This document shows, one piece after another, positions 146 to 39,339 of a stretch of 64,000 nt of DNA. Source of the DNA: Anolis carolinensis (taxonomy: Eukaryota); the NCBI RefSeq assembly GCF_035594765.1, contig NC_085846.1, positions 99,993,190-100,057,189 on the forward strand. The letters run 5' to 3'. The notes under the pieces are model-generated. The model made no database searches. It was not told where the DNA came from and saw only the letters and a program-made list of their open reading frames with translations. The position numbers and the translations under genes are program-made. Position 1 is the first letter of the stretch. The number at the start of each line of letters is the position of its first letter.

Positions 146-616
146 TGCATTGACTCCATGATATTCATAGTGTAGCATCAACATTTAGTTTGACCTTAAA
201 AATACTGCTTACTGTGACATGTCAGCCACTACCAGCTAGTTTGCCATCCAACCCAGAAAGCAACTGTATGCTTAGAACAACAGATTTCAACCACCATATC
301 ATAGGCTATCACCCGTAGCCAAGTATGGTTGTTTTCCAAGGGTAGAATCTTGGCGGTGGGTTCATAAGTCACTGTAGAGACCTATTCTGGATCTACATAG
401 ATTTCCAGATAAAAGGCAATCCCAACAAGGGTTTGCTTGATGAACCTTCCTCTTGGCATTCAATCACTATAAGCCTTGCGCCAAAGTCCAGAACATCTGG
501 AGAAGGAAAAGTTGAACTTCATCACAACATAATGATTGTTTTGATTATTATCTTGTGGCTATTTTAATGTTGCTTCAGTTCCTTTCAGCTTCTCTCTTTT
601 TTCCTTTGTTCCAAAG

Positions 617-724
617 GGGACTGTAGGATTTGAAGCTCATATTGACAAGTGCTTGGACCTTGCAGAATACCTGTATAACAAAATAAAGAATAGAGAAGGC
701 TATGAAATGGTATTTGATGGAAAG
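617..724 (+). CDS. GAD2: Glutamate decarboxylase 2 (GAD65), third-last coding exon: [36 protein letters not shown]
   Basis: Pyrimidine tract plus ccaaag| acceptor and AAG|gtacat donor; 108 nt, phase 0/0; peptide matches GAD65 GTTGFEAHVDKCLELAEYLY...[11 protein letters not shown]. Confidence 0.95.
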
Positions 725-1460
725 GTACATCTTTACTCTAACTTTGAATGTTTGTTCTCCGGCCAATGTCTATTGATCCAGACATACTGAGAGGAAACAC
801 CACTAAATGTGGAAAATGTTATTTCCCAGTAAATATGCATAGGGTTATTTTTTTAAAGGGCTTCCATTAGTACACCAGTCTTAACTAGCCTTCGATTTTA
901 TTAATAGGGAAGTCTTCTTCAGAAAACAATTAGATAGATAACAGTTTTGCTTCCGGTTTGTTAACTATTTTTTCTGGCCACTATGCTGGAAGGAATCAGT
1001 ATATGCCATGAATAGGCAGCTGGTCCTTCAGAACTTTTGGCCTACAACCCCATCAGTGCCAGCAGCCAAATCAATTGTGAGGAGTTATGGGAGCTGTAGT
1101 CCCAAAACATCTGGAAGACTGCAATTGCCAAGACGTGATATCACCATTGGCAGAATAATTGTGCTAAATCATTAATGGATTACAAGACTGATGCAAGGAC
1201 CACACCTGGCATGCATGCCAGCAATAGTAAGACCTGTTGTTTTCAATCAGGGCTTTTACATTGCAAGTTTTCAAAGCCATGTTTCCTTCAGCTATTTCTA
1301 ATTGCAGCACTCAGAAATTCTGAACCATAATCCATGACTGAAACTCTCAGGGTCCAAATGGCTATGTTGGCTGACTCTTGTGGGAACTGAAGGCCAAAAC
1401 ACTTGGAGAACTAAAGGTAGAAACCCAGTGCTTCAAGAGAGTGGGAGTCAAGCATATCTA

Positions 1461-1880
1461 CCGTGTTTCCCCGAAAATAAGACAGAGTCTTATATATATT
1501 TTTGCTCCCAAAGATGCTCTAGGTCTTATTTTCAGGGGATGTCTTATTTTTCCATGAAGAAGAATTCACATTTATTGTTGAACAAAAAAATGAACATTTA
1601 TTATATACTGTTAGGTAGTTGTCATCACAAACCAGCATAACCAGACAAACTGTGAATCCTGTCAAGAATTTGTTGTTACTACCATTATTTCCATGTACAA
1701 CTGGTATGTACATTTACCAATCCTGCATGCTCTGGTGTTCTGTTTGGCAGGCGTTGGGCATGCTTCCAAACAAAAACTTTGCTAGGTCTTACTTTCGAGG
1801 GAGGCCTTATATTTAGCAATTCAGCAAAACTTCTACTAGGTCTTATTTTTCGAGGATGTCTTATTTTCGGGGAAACAGGG
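1461..1880. mobile_element. Non-autonomous Tc1/mariner (Tc2-like) DNA transposon
   Basis: TIRs CCGTGTTTCCCCGAAAATAAGAC / GTCTTATTTTCGGGGAAACAGGG flanked by TA on both sides. Confidence 0.8.
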
Positions 1881-2333
1881 TATGAAGAGCCCTTCATTTC
1901 TGGAGAGATCTCAAAATTTGCTGTAAACAACAGCTATGGAAGTGACCATTATATGTATGACTACTAGTTTGGGTAGCACATTGTAAAAAAAATGAGGAGG
2001 CATCTTACCCTCAAAGAAGACAAAGATAACAGAGATCTGCATAAGGAGTCATATGCTAACGTATCTATTAGCATACATCATTGAAAATTTTTTTTCATAA
2101 TTTAAAAGAGAAATAGTATAATGAGGAAGACTTAGACTATGGTACATCTACACTGTGAATTTAATGCAGTTTGGTACCGCTTTAATTGTCATGGCTCAAT
2201 GCTATGGAATCCTGGGAGATGTAGTGTGCTGGGAGTTGTCTCATAAGGAAGGGCAATATAAGGGAAGGGAAAAATCATGAATGTGTCTGTGACTGAACTA
2301 CCCTTAATATATATGCTGTCATTCTTCCATTAG

Positions 2334-2423
2334 CCTCAACACACAAACGTTTGCTTCTGGTATCTGCCTCCTAGTTTACGAAATATGGAGGATAATGAAG
2401 AAAGAATGAATCGACTTTCAAAG
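2334..2423 (+). CDS. GAD2: GAD65 penultimate coding exon: [30 protein letters not shown]
   Basis: ttccattag| acceptor, AAG|gtaaat donor, 90 nt phase 0/0; GAD65-type EDNEERM..LSK. Confidence 0.95.
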
Positions 2424-3529
2424 GTAAATACAAGAAAAAAAGAGAGGACAATGAAATTTCTGGTCATGAAGTAATGAAAATATGTGTTTTTGAGTGACCT
2501 GATTCCAACACTCATCTGATCCCTTATTATTGGATAAAAGACTCCGTTCATTTTTTACAAGGCTGCAGCACAAGCTGCTTCCACACAGCCATTTAATCCA
2601 GAGCAGACTTTGGATTTAAGAGATCCAGTTTTTTCCAGAGTGCCTATGCAGGCACCCTGGGAACTGGCTGAAAGATCAAAGAGAGTCCACACATCCACTG
2701 GTACTCTTAATCCACATTCTGCTCTGACTTGGCTCCGTCAAAGCTCAGAATGTTATTGTATTTTATCTTCCCTTATCTCCTGGCAAGCATCTTTCCAACA
2801 CTTGCTTCACAAGAAAGCAGCAAGACTTTGGGCACCCATGGGAATGCCACACTTCAGGGGATGAGGTGGGGGTGGGAAGGTTTTCTTTACTTTCTGGCTG
2901 GACTGTTCAGATGCTTTTGAATTGTTTACATTTGCCTCTGTATTTGGCATTTGGCATTTGGCTAACTGCCTGTGGCATGGTTAGACACAGGATTGATTCA
3001 GCAAATTTTCTGGCTGGGATCAGTATTTCTGATGAGTTTTCTTATCATGCTGTTTCTGGGTAGATTCACTCTGGAACTCACATGGGGGGGGGGGGAGAGA
3101 ATGTTTTCTGAACACCTCGACTTCTTGCTGACTTCAAGCCAGATTTTACTGCATGTATAAATGGGGCCATAGTTTATGAATGTTGAGGTTGGTTATTGAC
3201 TTCTACATGGTCTTCCAGAGGAATCTTGGTTAGGGGAGAGCTGGGGAAAGTTGTTGTCATTTGCTATCAAGTTGACTTTGACGTATGAATGAGAGATTTC
3301 CAACAGCCCCAGGTATCAGCTTCCCTTTTCGTACTCAAGACTGCAGTTTCTTTGATTGAATCAATTCACTTCTAGAGGGAGGGCAGGAAGCTCAGTATGA
3401 GAGTGGGTTTTATTAGATGTTATGTATGGGGAGTCCCATATGTGGTGCACAGTAGTAATTTCAAACTCTGAATTTGGAATCATAGAACCATAAAGTTGGG
3501 AGGGATCTCAAGGACCATCTTAGTCAACT

Positions 3530-5060
3530 ATTATTTATGTATTATTATTATGTTTATTTATATCCTGCTTTTTCTCTACATACGGAGATTCAAAGCAGCT
3601 TACAACTAAAAACATTTCAATACAACTTAAAATATACAAATAGTAAAATAGTATTAAACAACATTAGTATTATGACAATCCAGGCTAAAACCATAAAAGC
3701 ATATAAAATCACATCACAAAATAACAGCAGCCCTTGATGGTATTAAACACCTTCATATTTAAAAGCCTGCCTGAATTAAAAGGTTTTGGCCTGTCGTCAG
3801 AAGGATAGCAAGGAAGGGGCCATTCTGGCTTCCCTGGGCAGGGAGTTCCAGAGTTGTGGGACAGCCGCCTAGAAGGCCCGCCCTCTCATTCCCACCAACT
3901 GAGCTTGAATGGGCACAGTTGAAACACAAGTTTTAATTGTGCAGAGGCCTTCATGGCCACCTCTGACACCTTGGCCTCCAGGTTCAGTGCTGAGTCCAGG
4001 AGGACCCCCAAATTGAAAACCTGCGCCTTCAAGGGGAGTGTGACCCCAATCCAGCACAGGCTGGATCTCTATTTCCTGATCTGTCTTACGACTGACCAGG
4101 AGTATCTCTGTCTTGGCTTAATTAAGTTTCAATTTGTTTGCTCTTATCCAGTCCATTACTGATGACAGACACTGGTTTAGGATCAGGACAGTTTCCTTGG
4201 CTTTAGGTAGAAAGGAGTAGTAGAGTCAGGTGTTATCTGCATATAGGTGGCATCGAACTCCCAAACCCGAATGGCCTCTCCCAGAGGTTTCATGTATATG
4301 TTGAAATGTATATGGGGGACAAAATAGAACCCTGAGGAACACCTCAAGATAACAGCCACTGGTTTGAACAGGAGTCCCCAGGACCACCTTCTGAATACGG
4401 CCCTCCAAGAAGTACTGGAGACATTGTAAAACAGTGCCTCCCAGTCCCATCCCAGCAGAACGACCCAGAAAGATATCATGGCTAATGGTATTGATGGGTT
4501 CAGGGATGGCTTTTTAATATAGGCCTAACAACTGCCTTCTTTAGGCAAGTTGGAACTTTGCTTTGTTCCAAGAAGGCATTGGCCACCCCCTTCACTCACT
4601 CTGCCAGTCCCCTCTGCCCTGTTTGATCAATCAGGAAGGACAAGGATCTAAAATACACATGGTAGCTCTCACCTCTTCAAGGATCCTATCCACATCCTTA
4701 AGCTGCAAAAATTGAAAGGTATCTATCAACACTGGATAAGCAGGAACTGTATCAATAATCGCATCCAAGTTACAATGAATCTGAGCTACTTTAACTGCAA
4801 AATGCTGTGCCAATTCTTCACGGAGGGCTGCTGAATGGTCAGGGATTTCATCTTGAGGACCAGTATGCAATAGCCCCTTGACCACTCAAAACAGCTTAGC
4901 TAGGTGGTTTTTTGCAGATTCAATGGTGGCAGCAATGAACAATTTCTCTGCTACCCCCATTGCCACGGAGTAGACTTTCAAATACGCTCTAGCCTGTGCT
5001 CGGTCAAATTCACTTCGAGTTCTCCGCCAATGTCACTGTAGACTCTGTCTCACTTGCTTC
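3530..5060 (-). mobile_element. Decayed L2-clade LINE (RT fragments and 3' tail)
   Basis: Frameshifted RT motifs FNIYMKPLGE and GVRCHLYADNT (YADD box) and ATMCILDPCPS in minus ORFs 4183-4885; (TTTA)-like tail at ~3530. Confidence 0.8.
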
Positions 5061-5876
5061 ATCACTGCCAACTCCTTGGAAAACCAAGGGTCTGGTTTGG
5101 CTCTGCTCCGTGAGAGGAGCTATTGTGTCCACCATCCAATCTCCCTTTCAGTGCAAGAGCCACATGCTGGGAGGTGGGCATCCAAACTCTGTTTAAATGC
5201 CTTCAAAGAAAGTCCCCTATCTTCTTGAACTGCATTTACTGTCAAGAAATTCTTCCAATTTTACAATTAAAGTTACACCCATAACCTGGAGAGGGGCCAT
5301 TGGGCAATGTTTTTTTCCTTCCTTCAAAATGTAGTCAGCCAACCTTGATTAATCTGAGGGTGTTCCTGCACATTTGATTGGTGTTCTAGATTTCTACTCC
5401 AAAGTTCTCTTCTAATGGCAGCTCTGGTCACATGTGTAGTTTGATCCTGACATTAAGAACAAGTTTACACTGGCCTGTTAATCCAGATTTAGTCTGGAGT
5501 AGAAATGCTGCAGACTGGCCTTGGAGGTGATCACACATACTGTCCCAAAGCCAGAGCGATGGCAGGTCAGGGTCTATATGGTCCAGCTGGGTTGAGCCTT
5601 AACCATTCATATTACTCTTGCCATTTCCAGATAGCCACAGAGCTCCTTTACTAATGAGTGCAGGGAATAGGGGTTGGTGGAAGTGCCTTGTGTGGACAAA
5701 GTACCAGTGTTCTGCCCTGTAGCCACAGGGTTGCTCCAGAGTTTTAGCCAAATTGTAGAGCATTCCCCAATTTTCCTAACATGGGACTAAACCAGATTAA
5801 CCCAATTTACCCTGTGATACCTACCACAAGAAGCAACCATGCAATGCTCACATGATTTCATACTGTGTTTGTGAAG

Positions 5877-6050
5877 GTGGCCCCAACAATTAAAGCCCGA
5901 ATGATGGAGTGCGGTTCCACTATGGTCAGCTATCAGCCTCTGGGAGACAAGGTCAACTTCTTCCGTATGGTTATCTCCAATCCATCAGCAGCTCACCAAG
6001 ACATCGATTTTCTGATTGAAGAAATAGAGCGCCTTGGGCAAGATTTATAA
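5877..6050 (+). CDS. GAD2: GAD65 terminal coding exon [57 protein letters not shown]
   Basis: gtgaag|GTG acceptor; GAD2-diagnostic residues [18 protein letters not shown] and HQDIDF (GAD1 has KALMME, VGYQPQGDKANF, QSDIDF); TAA 6048-6050. Confidence 0.97.
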
Positions 6051-28770: not shown

Positions 28771-29279
28771 ATTGTTTTAGGTAGTACCATGTTGCCAAGT
28801 TGTCTTTTGATCAGCCCACTCCACTTCTGAGTCTATTCAGGGGCTTCCAAGTTTCCCATCCTTGGTTTGACCCTGGAGGAAGACCCTTATGGGGGGCCAT
28901 CCAATTGGGATTTCCTGGTATAGCTGCCCATACTCTTGCTGTTGCTGGGGGAACATTAAGAGGAGTGGTGGTTCTCATGAAGCTTTTCCTTTATTTGAGT
29001 CTACTGGGAGGAGGCTAGCAGCCATGTAGTGGATGGCTTTCACAGTATTTGCAGATTCATGGCTCCATACAAAGTCCAAGAATATATTCCCTATATGGAG
29101 TCTACTTCCATTTTAATCAACCATATAATACTCTTCTTGTTGTGCCTTCTCTATTCTCTCCCATCCAAATATAGCTGGAGAAAAGAAAACGACCAACACA
29201 GTCTTACTGGATGTTCCTCCTCATAGTTCCATAATCCTAACATTCATCTGGTTACATTTTAGTTTCATCCTGGGATTTG

Positions 29280-30799
29280 CTAGGATGAAATCCATAAGAC
29301 AGATAGGCTGGTTCCAGGTCCATGAGCAATATGGTTGATTCTTCCACGCACACAATCAAGAGAAATAGATATCATTGTACCATTGTGAACTTCAAAAGAA
29401 AAGTGAAAGCTAACACTGGTCCAGATGCTTCCTTCTGGCATTTGACCTCCAACTTGCTGGGCAATTGCATGAGGTTGCACATGATCACCAGTGAACTGGT
29501 TTAGAGTTACTTGGAGCATGTTACAGGAGTGGATCAGCTTTAAAGTCAATGCAACACTGGCTACTCCACTTTCAGTGAACAAAACATATTTCTGAGCATG
29601 CTGTCCAGTAGATATCAGATAGACCTGCTTCTCAATGGGTGAGACCTGCATAAAATCCAGTAACTTGTTCCTGACAGCTCCTGTGGGCAGCCCCTTAATG
29701 GAAACTGAGGCTGAAAGAGCAGCAGACACCGCAGATGGGATCCAGATGAGGCTAAGCATGCTAATTCCAGAACCATCTCCAAAATAACGAACATTGCATT
29801 GTGCTGGTGAAAGGATCTCAAAACTAATAAGATCCCCAGCTCCAACTCTGGTGGCCCCGGAGGCAGATATTGATGTGTCTCTGTAATTGACACCAGACTT
29901 ATAAACGGTCATCAATTCTGAATTGGTGCCATTTCTGTTGAGATAAGAAACCAGTGAAAAACCTTCACGGACACAGGTCTGACCCATGGAGTATAAGGCT
30001 TGGTGAAACACAAACTTTACAACACCAGTTTCAGTAAACTTGATGGCTTTCCCATCATGGGACAACGTTAGCATGTAAGGATCAGAAACAGAACCTAATT
30101 TAAAGGTGGGTCGATAGCTGTTTTGGTAATGCATCGCCGTAGTAGTCTGTGCAGTCATGGCCACGGCTCCTGTATCATGTGATAACCAAAACAAACTGAA
30201 GGGTGTGTTGAGGTCATAAATGTTTAAATCTTTGCTTTGGTTGCAGAATTGATTAGGGCTCTTCAAAAACACTGAGAGAGTTTGGCTCGGCTCTACCTCT
30301 GCAGCACCACTCAAGCTGACGCCCTGGAAAATTTTACCTTCTGGCTGTTCGATACGAACCCCACTCAGCTCATAGCCTTCCTCACTGTTGTTGACTTTGA
30401 GAGAAAGTTGGAGGAAATTCCTGCAGCTGTGTTTCACAGCAAAATTGAAGTCAGCCCACATTAAGCCATGTTGCTTGAATATTAAGCTGTTGCTTGCCAC
30501 TGTTCCAATGTTGCATTCCTGTTTTGCCTTGATGGGCAAATTGAAACCGGGATAGACTTGAGATGTGCCAAATTTTGTCAAGGGGAAAACAAGGTTTGCA
30601 GCCCATGACTCAGACAACTTGCTTTCACTGGCTGTTGAACAAACGGTATCACTTACAGTGGAGCAAGGGAAAGCGACCACCCCAGTATCACATATAAGAC
30701 ATGCTTGACACTCCTGTAGCTCTTTGTTAAAGAAGTACTCCTCACCACACAGTCCCAAAGCAGCTTCTTTTTCTGCAATCCCAAGACACCGGAATCCTC
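29280..30799 (-). CDS. Uncharacterised secreted protein, last coding exon (1520 nt): end of cbEGF, TNFR Cys-rich repeat 2, three tandem C1q/TNF-like domains, stop
   Basis: tctttccttcctgtcaacag| acceptor, phase 1, continuing in frame into the 492-aa ORF; TAG at 29282-29280. Confidence 0.93.
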
Positions 30800-33427: not shown

Positions 33428-33966
33428 CTGACATATCCGATCAGCATTTGAAGAACACTCAGACAGCTGGAAAAAACCAGCAGGACATAAGGTGCATTTT
33501 TCACATTGCGAGGGTGTATTTTGGAAATTGCAAAATTCATCACTTTCACAAAGGCCACAGTCCATTAAAGGTTCTCCAATATCAATCACTTTTGCATCAA
33601 CTTCTATTTTATGCACAGAGTAGGATTTCTGGAGATGATTCCTGGCTTGGTTCTGGAGGCCTTGGAGATTGGCTTCAAAATAATGCTGAATATCCTCTTG
33701 CAGACCCTGAAATGACATTTGTTTCACTGTGTCAAAAAGCATGCCATACTGGACCTTGATCAGGTCCATTTGCTCATACATTTTCCTTTGTTGTTCAATA
33801 ATTTCCAGCTGCTGAGTGGCCAATACATTCTGTTGCTCCATTAGTTTTTGCTGTAAATCCATCATTAACGTCTGCTGGCTCTTCAAAGCTTCAACAAATT
33901 TCTCTTGCCCTTTGGTAAGCTGGAGCTGAAGCACAAGTGCATCTTCTGATGGGACTTCGTTTTCTC
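33428..33966 (-). CDS. Same gene, 539-nt coding exon: Gln-rich coiled coil and TNFR Cys-rich repeat 1
   Basis: tttgtattttag| acceptor (phase 1), CAG|gtaaag donor (phase 0); ends CEKCTLCPAGFFQLSECSSNADRICQ. Confidence 0.93.
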
Positions 33967-35613: not shown

Positions 35614-36238
35614 CTGGTTTAACATCACACGTAAGCTGAACGCCTAGAGCGCCACCTCCTAAATCCGACGCTGTGTAAGCAAGGTCTTCCCCAATGAACT
35701 GGGCAGCTATCTCAGCTGCTCTGACCAGTGTGGGTTCAGGACATCCTTCTCCCTGGTTCGGTGAGCATGGCATAGCCTGACCAGCTAGTCTGGGCTTCTG
35801 GCGAATGCGCAGGGCCAGCCTACACTCAAAGCCTTTGCAATTCTGGGCAGTGCCATTCGGAGCCCTTGGGGTGCAGTCTCCTCCTCCTGGGCAATTCTCC
35901 CTTGTGTTCTTCATGGCCAGAGATGCATGTTCAACACCTCTCCCCACAAGAGGATATTGCTCCTGCTGTTGTTGGACAGATAGGTATAGCTTGCTGTGGG
36001 GTTGTCCTCGCACAAAGGTGCCCATGTGGGCAAAAGTACGGGAGGAGCGATTTGCCCTGCCTGAGCAATGGGATCCTTGGCACAGCTGTCTGCCAGGTGG
36101 TTGCTCATCCTGGCTGCTCCTGCTACATGGGGGGCTTCTACAGAGTTCGGTGCTAACGTCTCTTCCCTCTCCAGTCAGAAACCAAAAGCACACAACAAGC
36201 CAGCAACAGCAAGTCCAGCTGGGCTGTCCCAACAGCAT
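35614..36238 (-). CDS. Same gene, first coding exon: signal peptide MLLGQPSWTCCCWLVVCFWFLTGEG and Cys-pair repeats
   Basis: tctcttacag| acceptor 12 nt upstream of the ATG; CAG|gtaggt donor phase 1; exons 625+539+67+1520 = 2751 nt = 916 aa plus stop. Confidence 0.88.
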
Positions 36239-36312
36239 CTCTGGTCACATCTGTAAGAGATTTATTTAGAATTTATTTACTTACATGTGTAGATACCACC
36301 CAGTCAAATGTT

Positions 36313-38629: not shown

Positions 38630-39172
38630 TCTCTCCTGACGTTTTTCCCACATCTATGGCAGGCATCCTCAGAAGTTGTGAGGTTTTTGGAAATTAGGCA
38701 AGTGAGGTTTATATCTGTGGAATGTTCTGCCTGAGAGTGTGAATGTTGCAATTGGCCAGCCTGAATAGTATTGAATAGCCTTGCAGCTTCAAAGCCTGGC
38801 TGCTAAAGAACAACACTCAGAAGACAGGGGAATTCCAGACAAGAAACAATCAGGGCCAGCTAATCACCTCCCAACAAAGGATTCCCCCAGACAGGAAGCA
38901 ATCAGGCTTTGAAGCTGAAAGGCCATTCAATGCTAATTAAGGTGGCCAATTGCAACATTCACACTTGCCTCAAGCAGACAAGAGCTCTTTCTCCCACCCT
39001 GGACTGTCCACAGATATATAAACCCCACTTGCCTAGTTTCCAACAGACCTCTGAGGATGCCTGCCATAGACATGGGTGAAACATCAGGAGAGAATGCTTC
39101 TGGAGTATGGCCATGCAGCCCGGAAAACTCACAGCAACCCAGTGATTCCGGCCATGAAAGCCTTTGACAACA
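38630..39172. mobile_element. Penelope-like element fragments in inverted arrangement
   Basis: Same sequence as 43112-43400, present in both orientations. Confidence 0.75.
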
Positions 39173-39339
39173 CAGTATACATTGCTGTACATTTATTTCT
39201 CTGGTTCCCGCAATCAATTCTAGGCAGACTAGGAACCGCAGATGAATAAATCAATGGTAGAGAATTAGAAGGATTAATATTTGTCTGAAAAGTGCCTAAC
39301 TTGATAAACCTATTTCTATTTGAAGAGTCCAAAGTTTTG

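What the first reader, a model, noticed from the sequence alone, without database searches (positions are those of the whole stretch)
29283..30611. Internal triplication of a C1q/TNF-like domain: candidate single-chain pseudo-trimer
Seen, using the 492-aa ORF numbering: three ~150-aa units (about 50-193, 197-341, 345-492) with aligned motifs. These are LIFKQHGLMWADFNF / IKFTETGVVKFVFHQ / VLFTESGVASVALTL; Cys at 112/262/412 and 172/321/469; KHSCRNFLQLSL vs IHSCNMLQVTL; SGAAEVEPSQTLSVFL / SGATRVGAGDLISFEI / FSFEVHNGTMISISL; and ends FSLFWLS / LSLIWIP / LSVLWIS. Established: gC1q/TNF jelly rolls carry F-x3-G-x-Y-x-F, L-x2-GD-x-V and a terminal FSGFL strand, have adjacent termini and work as trimers. 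Inference: three domains with ~3-4-aa linkers, all in one exon, could fold as an intramolecular asymmetric trimer. That would be a natural version of engineered single-chain TNF, with three different binding grooves. C1QTNF4 has only two tandem domains.
Basis: partly seen in the sequence, partly recalled or inferred. Interest (0 to 1): 0.85.

Follow-up and report, generated by a model that had tools for sequence, protein, structure and literature searches.

The report
Natural single-chain TNF/C1q trimer in chordates
An unstudied secreted protein found from amphioxus to lizards, birds and platypus, with no relative found in marsupials or placental mammals, is predicted to fold three different TNF/C1q-type domains of one chain into the three-part head that TNF and C1q build from three separate chains.

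The parts
35614..36238 (-). Coding exon 1 (625 nt, phase 1): signal-peptide-like N-terminus, Cys-rich low-complexity region, conserved lone Cys motif at its end
   Evidence: tblastn with full-length homologues and GT donor; spliced contigs; an upstream untranslated exon joins at 36250
36164..36238 (-). Probable signal peptide (about 25 aa)
   Evidence: Hydrophobic N-terminus here and in full-length homologues; no signal-peptide predictor was run (inference)
35627..35629 (-). Cys of the L-x-C-D motif just ahead of the coiled coil; candidate interchain disulfide
   Evidence: Motif present in vertebrates, lamprey, Styela and amphioxus; disulfide role inferred
33428..33966 (-). Coding exon 2 (539 nt): coiled coil and first TNFR-type Cys module
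33620..33925 (-). Coiled coil (about 100 aa); heptads with Leu/Ile/Met at one core position and five successive Gln at the other
   Evidence: Heptad count; 57-residue helix in the amphioxus model; near-invariant Gln
33431..33550 (-). TNFR/NGFR cysteine-rich module 1 (PF00020)
   Evidence: Pfam E 3.8e-7, above the gathering score
31761..31827 (-). Coding exon 3 (67 nt): most of a calcium-binding EGF domain, which ends in the first residues of exon 4
   Evidence: 91% identical to birds and platypus; PF07645 in full-length homologues; spliced contigs
29280..30799 (-). Coding exon 4 (1520 nt with stop): end of EGF, TNFR module 2, three TNF/C1q-fold domains
30639..30749 (-). TNFR/NGFR cysteine-rich module 2 (residues 17-53)
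   Evidence: Pfam E 1.7e-5, slightly below the gathering score; weak p75NTR match; six Cys conserved in 58-59 of 59
30183..30617 (-). Jelly-roll domain D1 (61-205); Cys125/Cys185; N-glycan sequons N136 (DE loop) and N186; net acidic
30165..30182 (-). Linker 1 (206-211); the most conserved segment of the head, no indels
   Evidence: 59 of 59 same length; 0.99 conservation in vertebrates, 0.91 in all chordates
29736..30164 (-). Jelly-roll domain D2 (212-354); Cys275/Cys334; sequon N289 (DE loop); most conserved domain
29727..29735 (-). Linker 2 (355-357), no indels
   Evidence: 59 of 59 same length
29283..29726 (-). Jelly-roll domain D3 (358-505); Cys425/Cys482; sequon N472; net basic, with near-invariant R484 and R486
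28962..29279 (-). 3' UTR; poly(A) hexamer at 28995-28990, transcript end near 28962
   Evidence: Hexamer; contig lengths from three studies put the end at 28962 if colinear

Best explanation
The gene encodes a secreted glycoprotein of an undescribed chordate family of the C1q/TNF fold. Its head is a natural single-chain pseudo-trimer: D1, D2 and D3 each form a jelly roll with one CD-to-GH-loop disulfide and pack around a pseudo-three-fold axis with their ends at the base, joined by short fixed linkers (predicted; about 0.88). Coding all three protomers in one chain fixes the A-B-C composition and handedness and lets the faces specialise (D1 acidic, D2 neutral, D3 basic), as the A, B and C chains of C1q do. 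The Gln-layered coiled coil, probably locked by the lone Cys ahead of it, gathers several chains, most likely three. A TNFR-Cys/EGF-Ca/TNFR-Cys stalk holds each head out, giving a C1q-like bouquet of asymmetric heads (inferred; about 0.65). The heads most likely bind a conserved host partner, a cell-surface protein or a matrix or glycan component, through the apical CD/EF/GH loops, and cross-link it by avidity (inferred; about 0.5). Shown: gene structure, expression, repeat, conservation, distribution. Predicted: fold and packing. Inferred: oligomer, binding surface, type of partner.
Against: No experimental data. AlphaFold2 has seen TNF/C1q trimers, including the single-chain entries, and a monomer prediction cannot show domain-swapped assemblies. 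No sequence-level hit to C1q or TNF. No tissue, ligand or phenotype data were found. The coiled-coil order (trimer) was not computed.
Confidence: 0.75

Rival explanations
1. Same single-chain head, but it acts as a TNF-type cytokine: a TNF-receptor-family protein binds in one or more of the three side grooves. Its own TNFR-type modules may dock in a groove as a built-in cap.
Against: N-glycan sequons in the DE loops of D1 and D2, where TNF ligands contact receptors (known biology), are conserved in 40/43 and 43/43 vertebrates, and the D3 DE loop is the most variable segment. No type II membrane anchor. The TNFR modules are single and separated by an EGF, unlike a receptor ectodomain, and their direction and short linker fit canonical docking poorly (inference).
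Confidence: 0.13
2. Same head, but it is a soluble pattern-recognition lectin or opsonin like the bivalve three-C1q proteins, binding microbial glycans.
For: Bivalve proteins with three C1q domains bind bacteria (PMC5519582, PMC10672478). Coiled-coil plus C1q layouts are typical of them (PMC6835236). Amphioxus has at least six divergent paralogues, one with a kringle.
Against: Single copy in tetrapods, only the genome-duplication pair in teleosts, with a species-like tree and 70-80% identity between lizard, birds and platypus. Recognition proteins under pathogen pressure usually expand and diverge. No mollusc protein among the named hits.
Confidence: 0.12
3. The three domains fold separately or trimerise between chains (domain-swapped or network-forming), and the intramolecular trimer is a prediction bias.
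For: AlphaFold2 was run on single chains and knows TNF trimers. In CTRP4 one domain is reported to be monomeric and the other to oligomerise (PMC9952994), so tandem domains need not pack together. The coiled coil brings three chains close, which could allow swapping.
Against: pTM 0.83, the same result for a ~30%-identical relative, invariant linker length and sequence, and conserved inner sheets in all three domains.
Confidence: 0.1

Closest known systems
Fish 'nell3' (si:ch211-37e10.2) and si:ch211-252f13.5; bird, reptile, amphibian and monotreme 'uncharacterized / TNFR-Cys domain-containing' proteins
   Same: These are the orthologues: 50-80% identity over the whole last exon, same exon layout in zebrafish, species-like tree.
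   Different: Databases annotate only the TNFR-Cys and EGF modules; the three TNF/C1q domains carry no annotation. No paper in the searched library mentions the gene names.
Engineered single-chain trimers: APRIL-BAFF-BAFF (4ZCH), single-chain C1q head (5HKJ/5HZF), adiponectin (4DOU), Cbln1 fusion (5KCA)
   Different: Those are laboratory constructs; this is a natural gene. Identity is 8-13%, and the three protomers have diverged to 16-28% identity with one another.
Complement C1q (A/B/C heterotrimeric heads in a bouquet)
   Same: Asymmetric three-faced head and, by inference, multivalent display.
   Different: C1q uses three genes and a collagen stalk. Here one chain makes the head, and the stalk is a coiled coil plus TNFR-Cys/EGF-Ca modules. 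The C1q signature residues are not kept.
Bivalve smultiC1q proteins (HcC1qDC6, CfC1qDC-2, oyster smultiC1q)
   Same: Secreted, three tandem C1q domains, similarly short spacing (24-159, 167-302, 305-443 in HcC1qDC6, PMC5519582); some have a coiled coil (PMC6835236).
   Different: They are recognisable C1q domains and belong to expanded immune families; no mollusc protein was among the named profile hits, so the triplication is probably independent. The HcC1qDC6 paper does not contain the word 'trimer'. No TNFR-Cys/EGF stalk is described for them.
TNF-superfamily ligands EDA, APRIL, BAFF, CD40L
   Different: No Pfam TNF hit, no type II anchor, different disulfide position, glycosylated DE loops, three unlike protomers in one chain.
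CTRP4 / C1QTNF4
   Same: Vertebrate secreted protein with tandem C1q-fold domains and no collagen.
   Different: Two domains, true C1q sequences; it oligomerises between chains through its second domain (PMC9952994).
NELL1/NELL2
   Same: Secreted, coiled coil, a calcium-binding EGF domain.
   Different: No laminin-G/TSPN or vWC domain and only one EGF; the name 'nell3' is misleading.

Membership tests
C1q/TNF superfamily (fold level) | Ten-strand jelly-roll sandwich of about 135-150 aa with both ends at the base | tested here: met
C1q/TNF superfamily (fold level) | Three protomers around a three-fold axis | tested here: met
C1q domain family (PF00386) | Match to the family profile | tested here: not met
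   No hit for the exon or for any of 41 single units from lizard to amphioxus; no PDB sequence hit with unit profiles
C1q domain family (PF00386) | G-x-Y in strand C and Gly in the last strand (F-S-G-F) | tested here: not met
   Gly of strand C invariant in all three units; Tyr replaced by aliphatic residues; last-strand Gly replaced by Leu/Ile
C1q domain family (PF00386) | Calcium site at the apex | not testable with these tools
   D1 has conserved E150, Q151 and Q158 at the EF loop, spaced like the adiponectin calcium ligands as recalled from memory; a lead only
TNF ligand family (PF00229) | Match to the family profile | tested here: not met
TNF ligand family (PF00229) | Type II membrane anchor ahead of the TNF domain | tested here: inconclusive
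   N-termini look like cleavable signal peptides and no other hydrophobic helix is seen, but no predictor was run
TNF ligand family (PF00229) | Binds a TNF-receptor-family protein in the inter-protomer groove | not testable with these tools
   Conserved DE-loop sequons argue against it for D1 and D2
TNF receptor superfamily | Contiguous cysteine-rich domains, usually followed by a membrane helix | tested here: not met
   Two single PF00020 modules separated by an EGF domain and followed directly by the jelly-roll head
NELL family | Laminin-G/TSPN domain, vWC domains and several EGF repeats | tested here: not met
   Pfam on full-length homologues finds only two TNFR_c6 and one EGF_CA
Bivalve smultiC1q | Signal peptide and three tandem C1q-fold domains | tested here: met
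   Layout matches at fold level
Bivalve smultiC1q | Sequence homology to mollusc C1q domains | tested here: not met
   Profile search of 1.84 billion representatives gave 31 hits; those identified are chordate. The profile was vertebrate-only and most short fragments were not identified.

The most novel reading that the evidence does not exclude
The protein is a self-contained ligand-and-receptor-module device: a natural single-chain heterotrimeric TNF-fold cytokine whose own TNFR-type module caps one groove until calcium, cleavage or partner binding frees it. It would signal in a chordate-wide pathway that therian mammals lost.
Probability: 0.1. Interest if true: 0.93.

Novelty: new variant of a known kind. 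Interest (0 to 1): 0.72.

Why it matters
Among solved structures searched here, single-chain TNF/C1q trimers exist only as engineered constructs. This family looks like a natural version that chordates have kept since the amphioxus-vertebrate split, with 3-6-residue linkers and three specialised faces. It offers a template for designing asymmetric TNF/C1q scaffolds. It adds a branch that Pfam misses to vertebrate C1q/TNF inventories and corrects a misleading name (nell3). It joins TNF-fold and TNFR-type modules in one secreted chain. It is strongly conserved in fish, amphibians, reptiles, birds and monotremes, with no therian copy found, so zebrafish, Xenopus or chick knockouts could reveal an extracellular function that live-bearing mammals dropped.

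Tried and rejected
Pfam and PDB sequence searches with the exon, the family profile and a pooled single-unit profile found no C1q or TNF hit; the fold shows only by structure and language-model features. A search for a stand-alone single-domain ancestor (81-259 aa candidates only) returned one family fragment, which is a weak test. Literature searches for nell3, both si:ch211 names and six LOC ids were empty. Supplements of five zebrafish single-cell papers and one gene-loss paper were also empty, so the tissue is unknown; the sequencing runs carry no tissue labels. Earlier scan findings: none. Rejected: (a) chance ORF or repeat, given splicing and conservation; (b) NELL membership; (c) single exon as evidence of a recent triplication, since the units split before the chordate radiation and an amphioxus copy has introns in the head; (d) three stacked homotrimers, on geometry. 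The spliced model was not searched as a joined protein: all searches went exon by exon, by reference, and whole-chain architecture comes from tool-supplied homologues. One early local script strung the exons together with mis-set boundaries as a frame check; its product was never used or sent to a search tool.

Full report
Setting. The window is lizard-like DNA by its repeats and by the position of the protein in the tree, beside agama and cobra. It has no N. The last exons of a glutamate decarboxylase gene of GAD2 type lie on the plus strand at about 600-6030. The finding lies about 23 kb downstream, tail to tail, on the minus strand.

Gene structure. The 492-aa ORF is most of the last coding exon of a four-exon gene: 36238-35614, 33966-33428, 31827-31761 and 30799-29280. 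All introns are GT-AG, the phases are compatible, and the total is 916 aa. Contigs from four studies skip exactly the three predicted introns, show an untranslated exon joining at 36250, and imply a 3' end near 28962, just past a poly(A) hexamer. The runs are only guessed to be RNA, but precise intron removal with no intron coverage in three of them shows transcripts. The joined model was not used in any search.

Homologues. The exon is 77-80% identical to birds, turtles and crocodilians, 70% to platypus, about 72% to frogs and 50-64% to fish, where the genes are called nell3 (si:ch211-37e10.2) and si:ch211-252f13.5. A profile search of 1.84 billion representatives reached lamprey, the tunicate Styela and at least six amphioxus paralogues, and nothing identified outside chordates. 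The tree follows species; the two fish genes are co-orthologues of the single tetrapod gene. With platypus as query, no marsupial or placental protein appears among the named hits, and the next best hits are birds at 79%; echidna has it. Loss in therians is therefore likely but was not tested on genomes. No paper in the library names the gene.

The repeat. On 59 sequences HHalign gives 95-97% for all three pairs of units, against under 2% for shuffled columns. Each unit has an invariant Gly at the start of strand C, one Cys in the CD loop and one after strand G. D1, D2 and D3 each form one group across chordates, so the triplication and the specialisation of the three units predate the amphioxus-vertebrate split. 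The canonical C1q/TNF Tyr of G-x-Y and the Gly of the last strand are both replaced in all units. This may be a compensated repacking of the core (inference), and it would explain why Pfam and PDB sequence searches see nothing.

Evidence for packing that does not rest on prediction. The segments spanning both linkers have the same length in 59 of 59 sequences, while DE and GH loops vary widely. These segments include flanking strands, which are length-constrained anyway. Linker 1 is the most conserved stretch of the head (0.99 in vertebrates), and the inner-sheet strands A, H, C and F are more conserved than D, E and G (0.77 vs 0.66). With both ends of each domain at the base and linkers of 3-6 residues, three separate homotrimers from three chains cannot be stacked (inference). 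Domain-swapped forms are not excluded. The engineered 4ZCH chain uses five-residue linkers (PMC4712316).

The rest of the chain. Full-length homologues have a hydrophobic N-terminus, a variable region (Cys-rich in vertebrates, with a kringle in one amphioxus paralogue), a conserved L-x-C-D motif, a coiled coil, then TNFR-Cys, EGF-Ca and TNFR-Cys modules before the head. The coiled coil has aliphatic residues at one core position and five successive Gln at the other, a pattern that by general knowledge suits trimers or higher orders. So each chain makes its own head and the coil gathers heads: probably three heads and nine jelly rolls, an arrangement that works like the C1q bouquet.

Likely binding face. 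By TNF topology the CD, EF and GH loops form the apex. The CD and EF loops and the D2 and D3 GH loops are the most conserved loops in vertebrates (0.75-0.89; the D1 GH loop is 0.65), with near-invariant charged residues such as R148, R484 and R486. The DE loops, which contact receptors in TNF ligands, carry N-glycan sequons in D1 (40/43) and D2 (43/43) and are hypervariable in D3. Net charge differs by domain: D1 -3.0, D2 +0.7, D3 +4.6. I therefore favour apical, C1q-like binding of a conserved host partner over TNF-like groove binding. Single-copy status and slow evolution in tetrapods argue against a pathogen-driven lectin, though the amphioxus expansion leaves that open.

Comparison with what is known. 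Three tandem C1q domains occur in bivalves: HcC1qDC6 has domains at 24-159, 167-302 and 305-443 (PMC5519582), and oysters have 21 multi-C1q genes, mostly with three domains, some with a coiled coil (PMC6835236). So the layout is not categorically new, although the HcC1qDC6 paper never mentions a trimer and no mollusc sequence was among the identified hits. CTRP4 has two domains and oligomerises between chains (PMC9952994). What appears new is a chordate-wide, Pfam-invisible family with a fixed A-B-C head of TNF/C1q fold, joined to TNFR-type modules, misnamed as a NELL, and apparently lost in therians.

Verdict. Observation confirmed; interpretation supported at the level of prediction. Single-chain pseudo-trimer about 0.88; oligomeric bouquet about 0.65; apical binding of a host partner about 0.5. 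Novelty: new variant of a known kind. Interest 0.72.

Noticed in passing
L001:10001-22625 (Branchiostoma floridae, LOC118405630): Two paralogous bodies share one first exon. One (P0128) is a single 649-codon exon lying inside the first intron of the other (P0133), which has ten further exons. This looks like a retrocopy captured by alternative splicing; the two bodies are about 36% identical.
   Followed up: partly
L001:19342-22458: In the intron-rich amphioxus paralogue one intron falls in the D1-D2 linker, and two phase-0 introns fall within about two codons of the same place (end of strand E) in D1 and D3. These may be relics of the ancestral repeat unit.
   Followed up: partly
window 600-6030 (+): Last exons of a glutamate decarboxylase gene of GAD2 type (Pfam PF00282 at 596-727; further exons near 2334 and 5889-6030), convergent with the gene studied.
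   Followed up: partly
window 41963-42214 (-): An 84-codon open stretch with coding-like composition that matches nothing examined; possibly an exon of another gene or a repeat-derived frame.
   Followed up: no
window 39130-39800 and 48860-49520: Two GC-rich patches upstream of the gene; the nearer may hold the untranslated first exon that joins at 36250.
   Followed up: no
P0010, P0012, P0014, P0020 and many bird entries (682-685 aa): Many database models of the orthologue start at a Met inside the coiled coil and lack exon 1 with the signal peptide; probably truncated annotations.
   Followed up: partly
window 30321-30350 (-), D1 residues 150-158: E150, Q151 and Q158 are invariant in the 45 vertebrate sequences of alignment A1 and spaced like the calcium ligands of adiponectin as recalled from memory; D2 has a conserved Lys at the first position.
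   Followed up: no
P0131 (Branchiostoma): One amphioxus paralogue has a kringle domain between the lone Cys and the coiled coil (Pfam E 9e-23).
   Followed up: no
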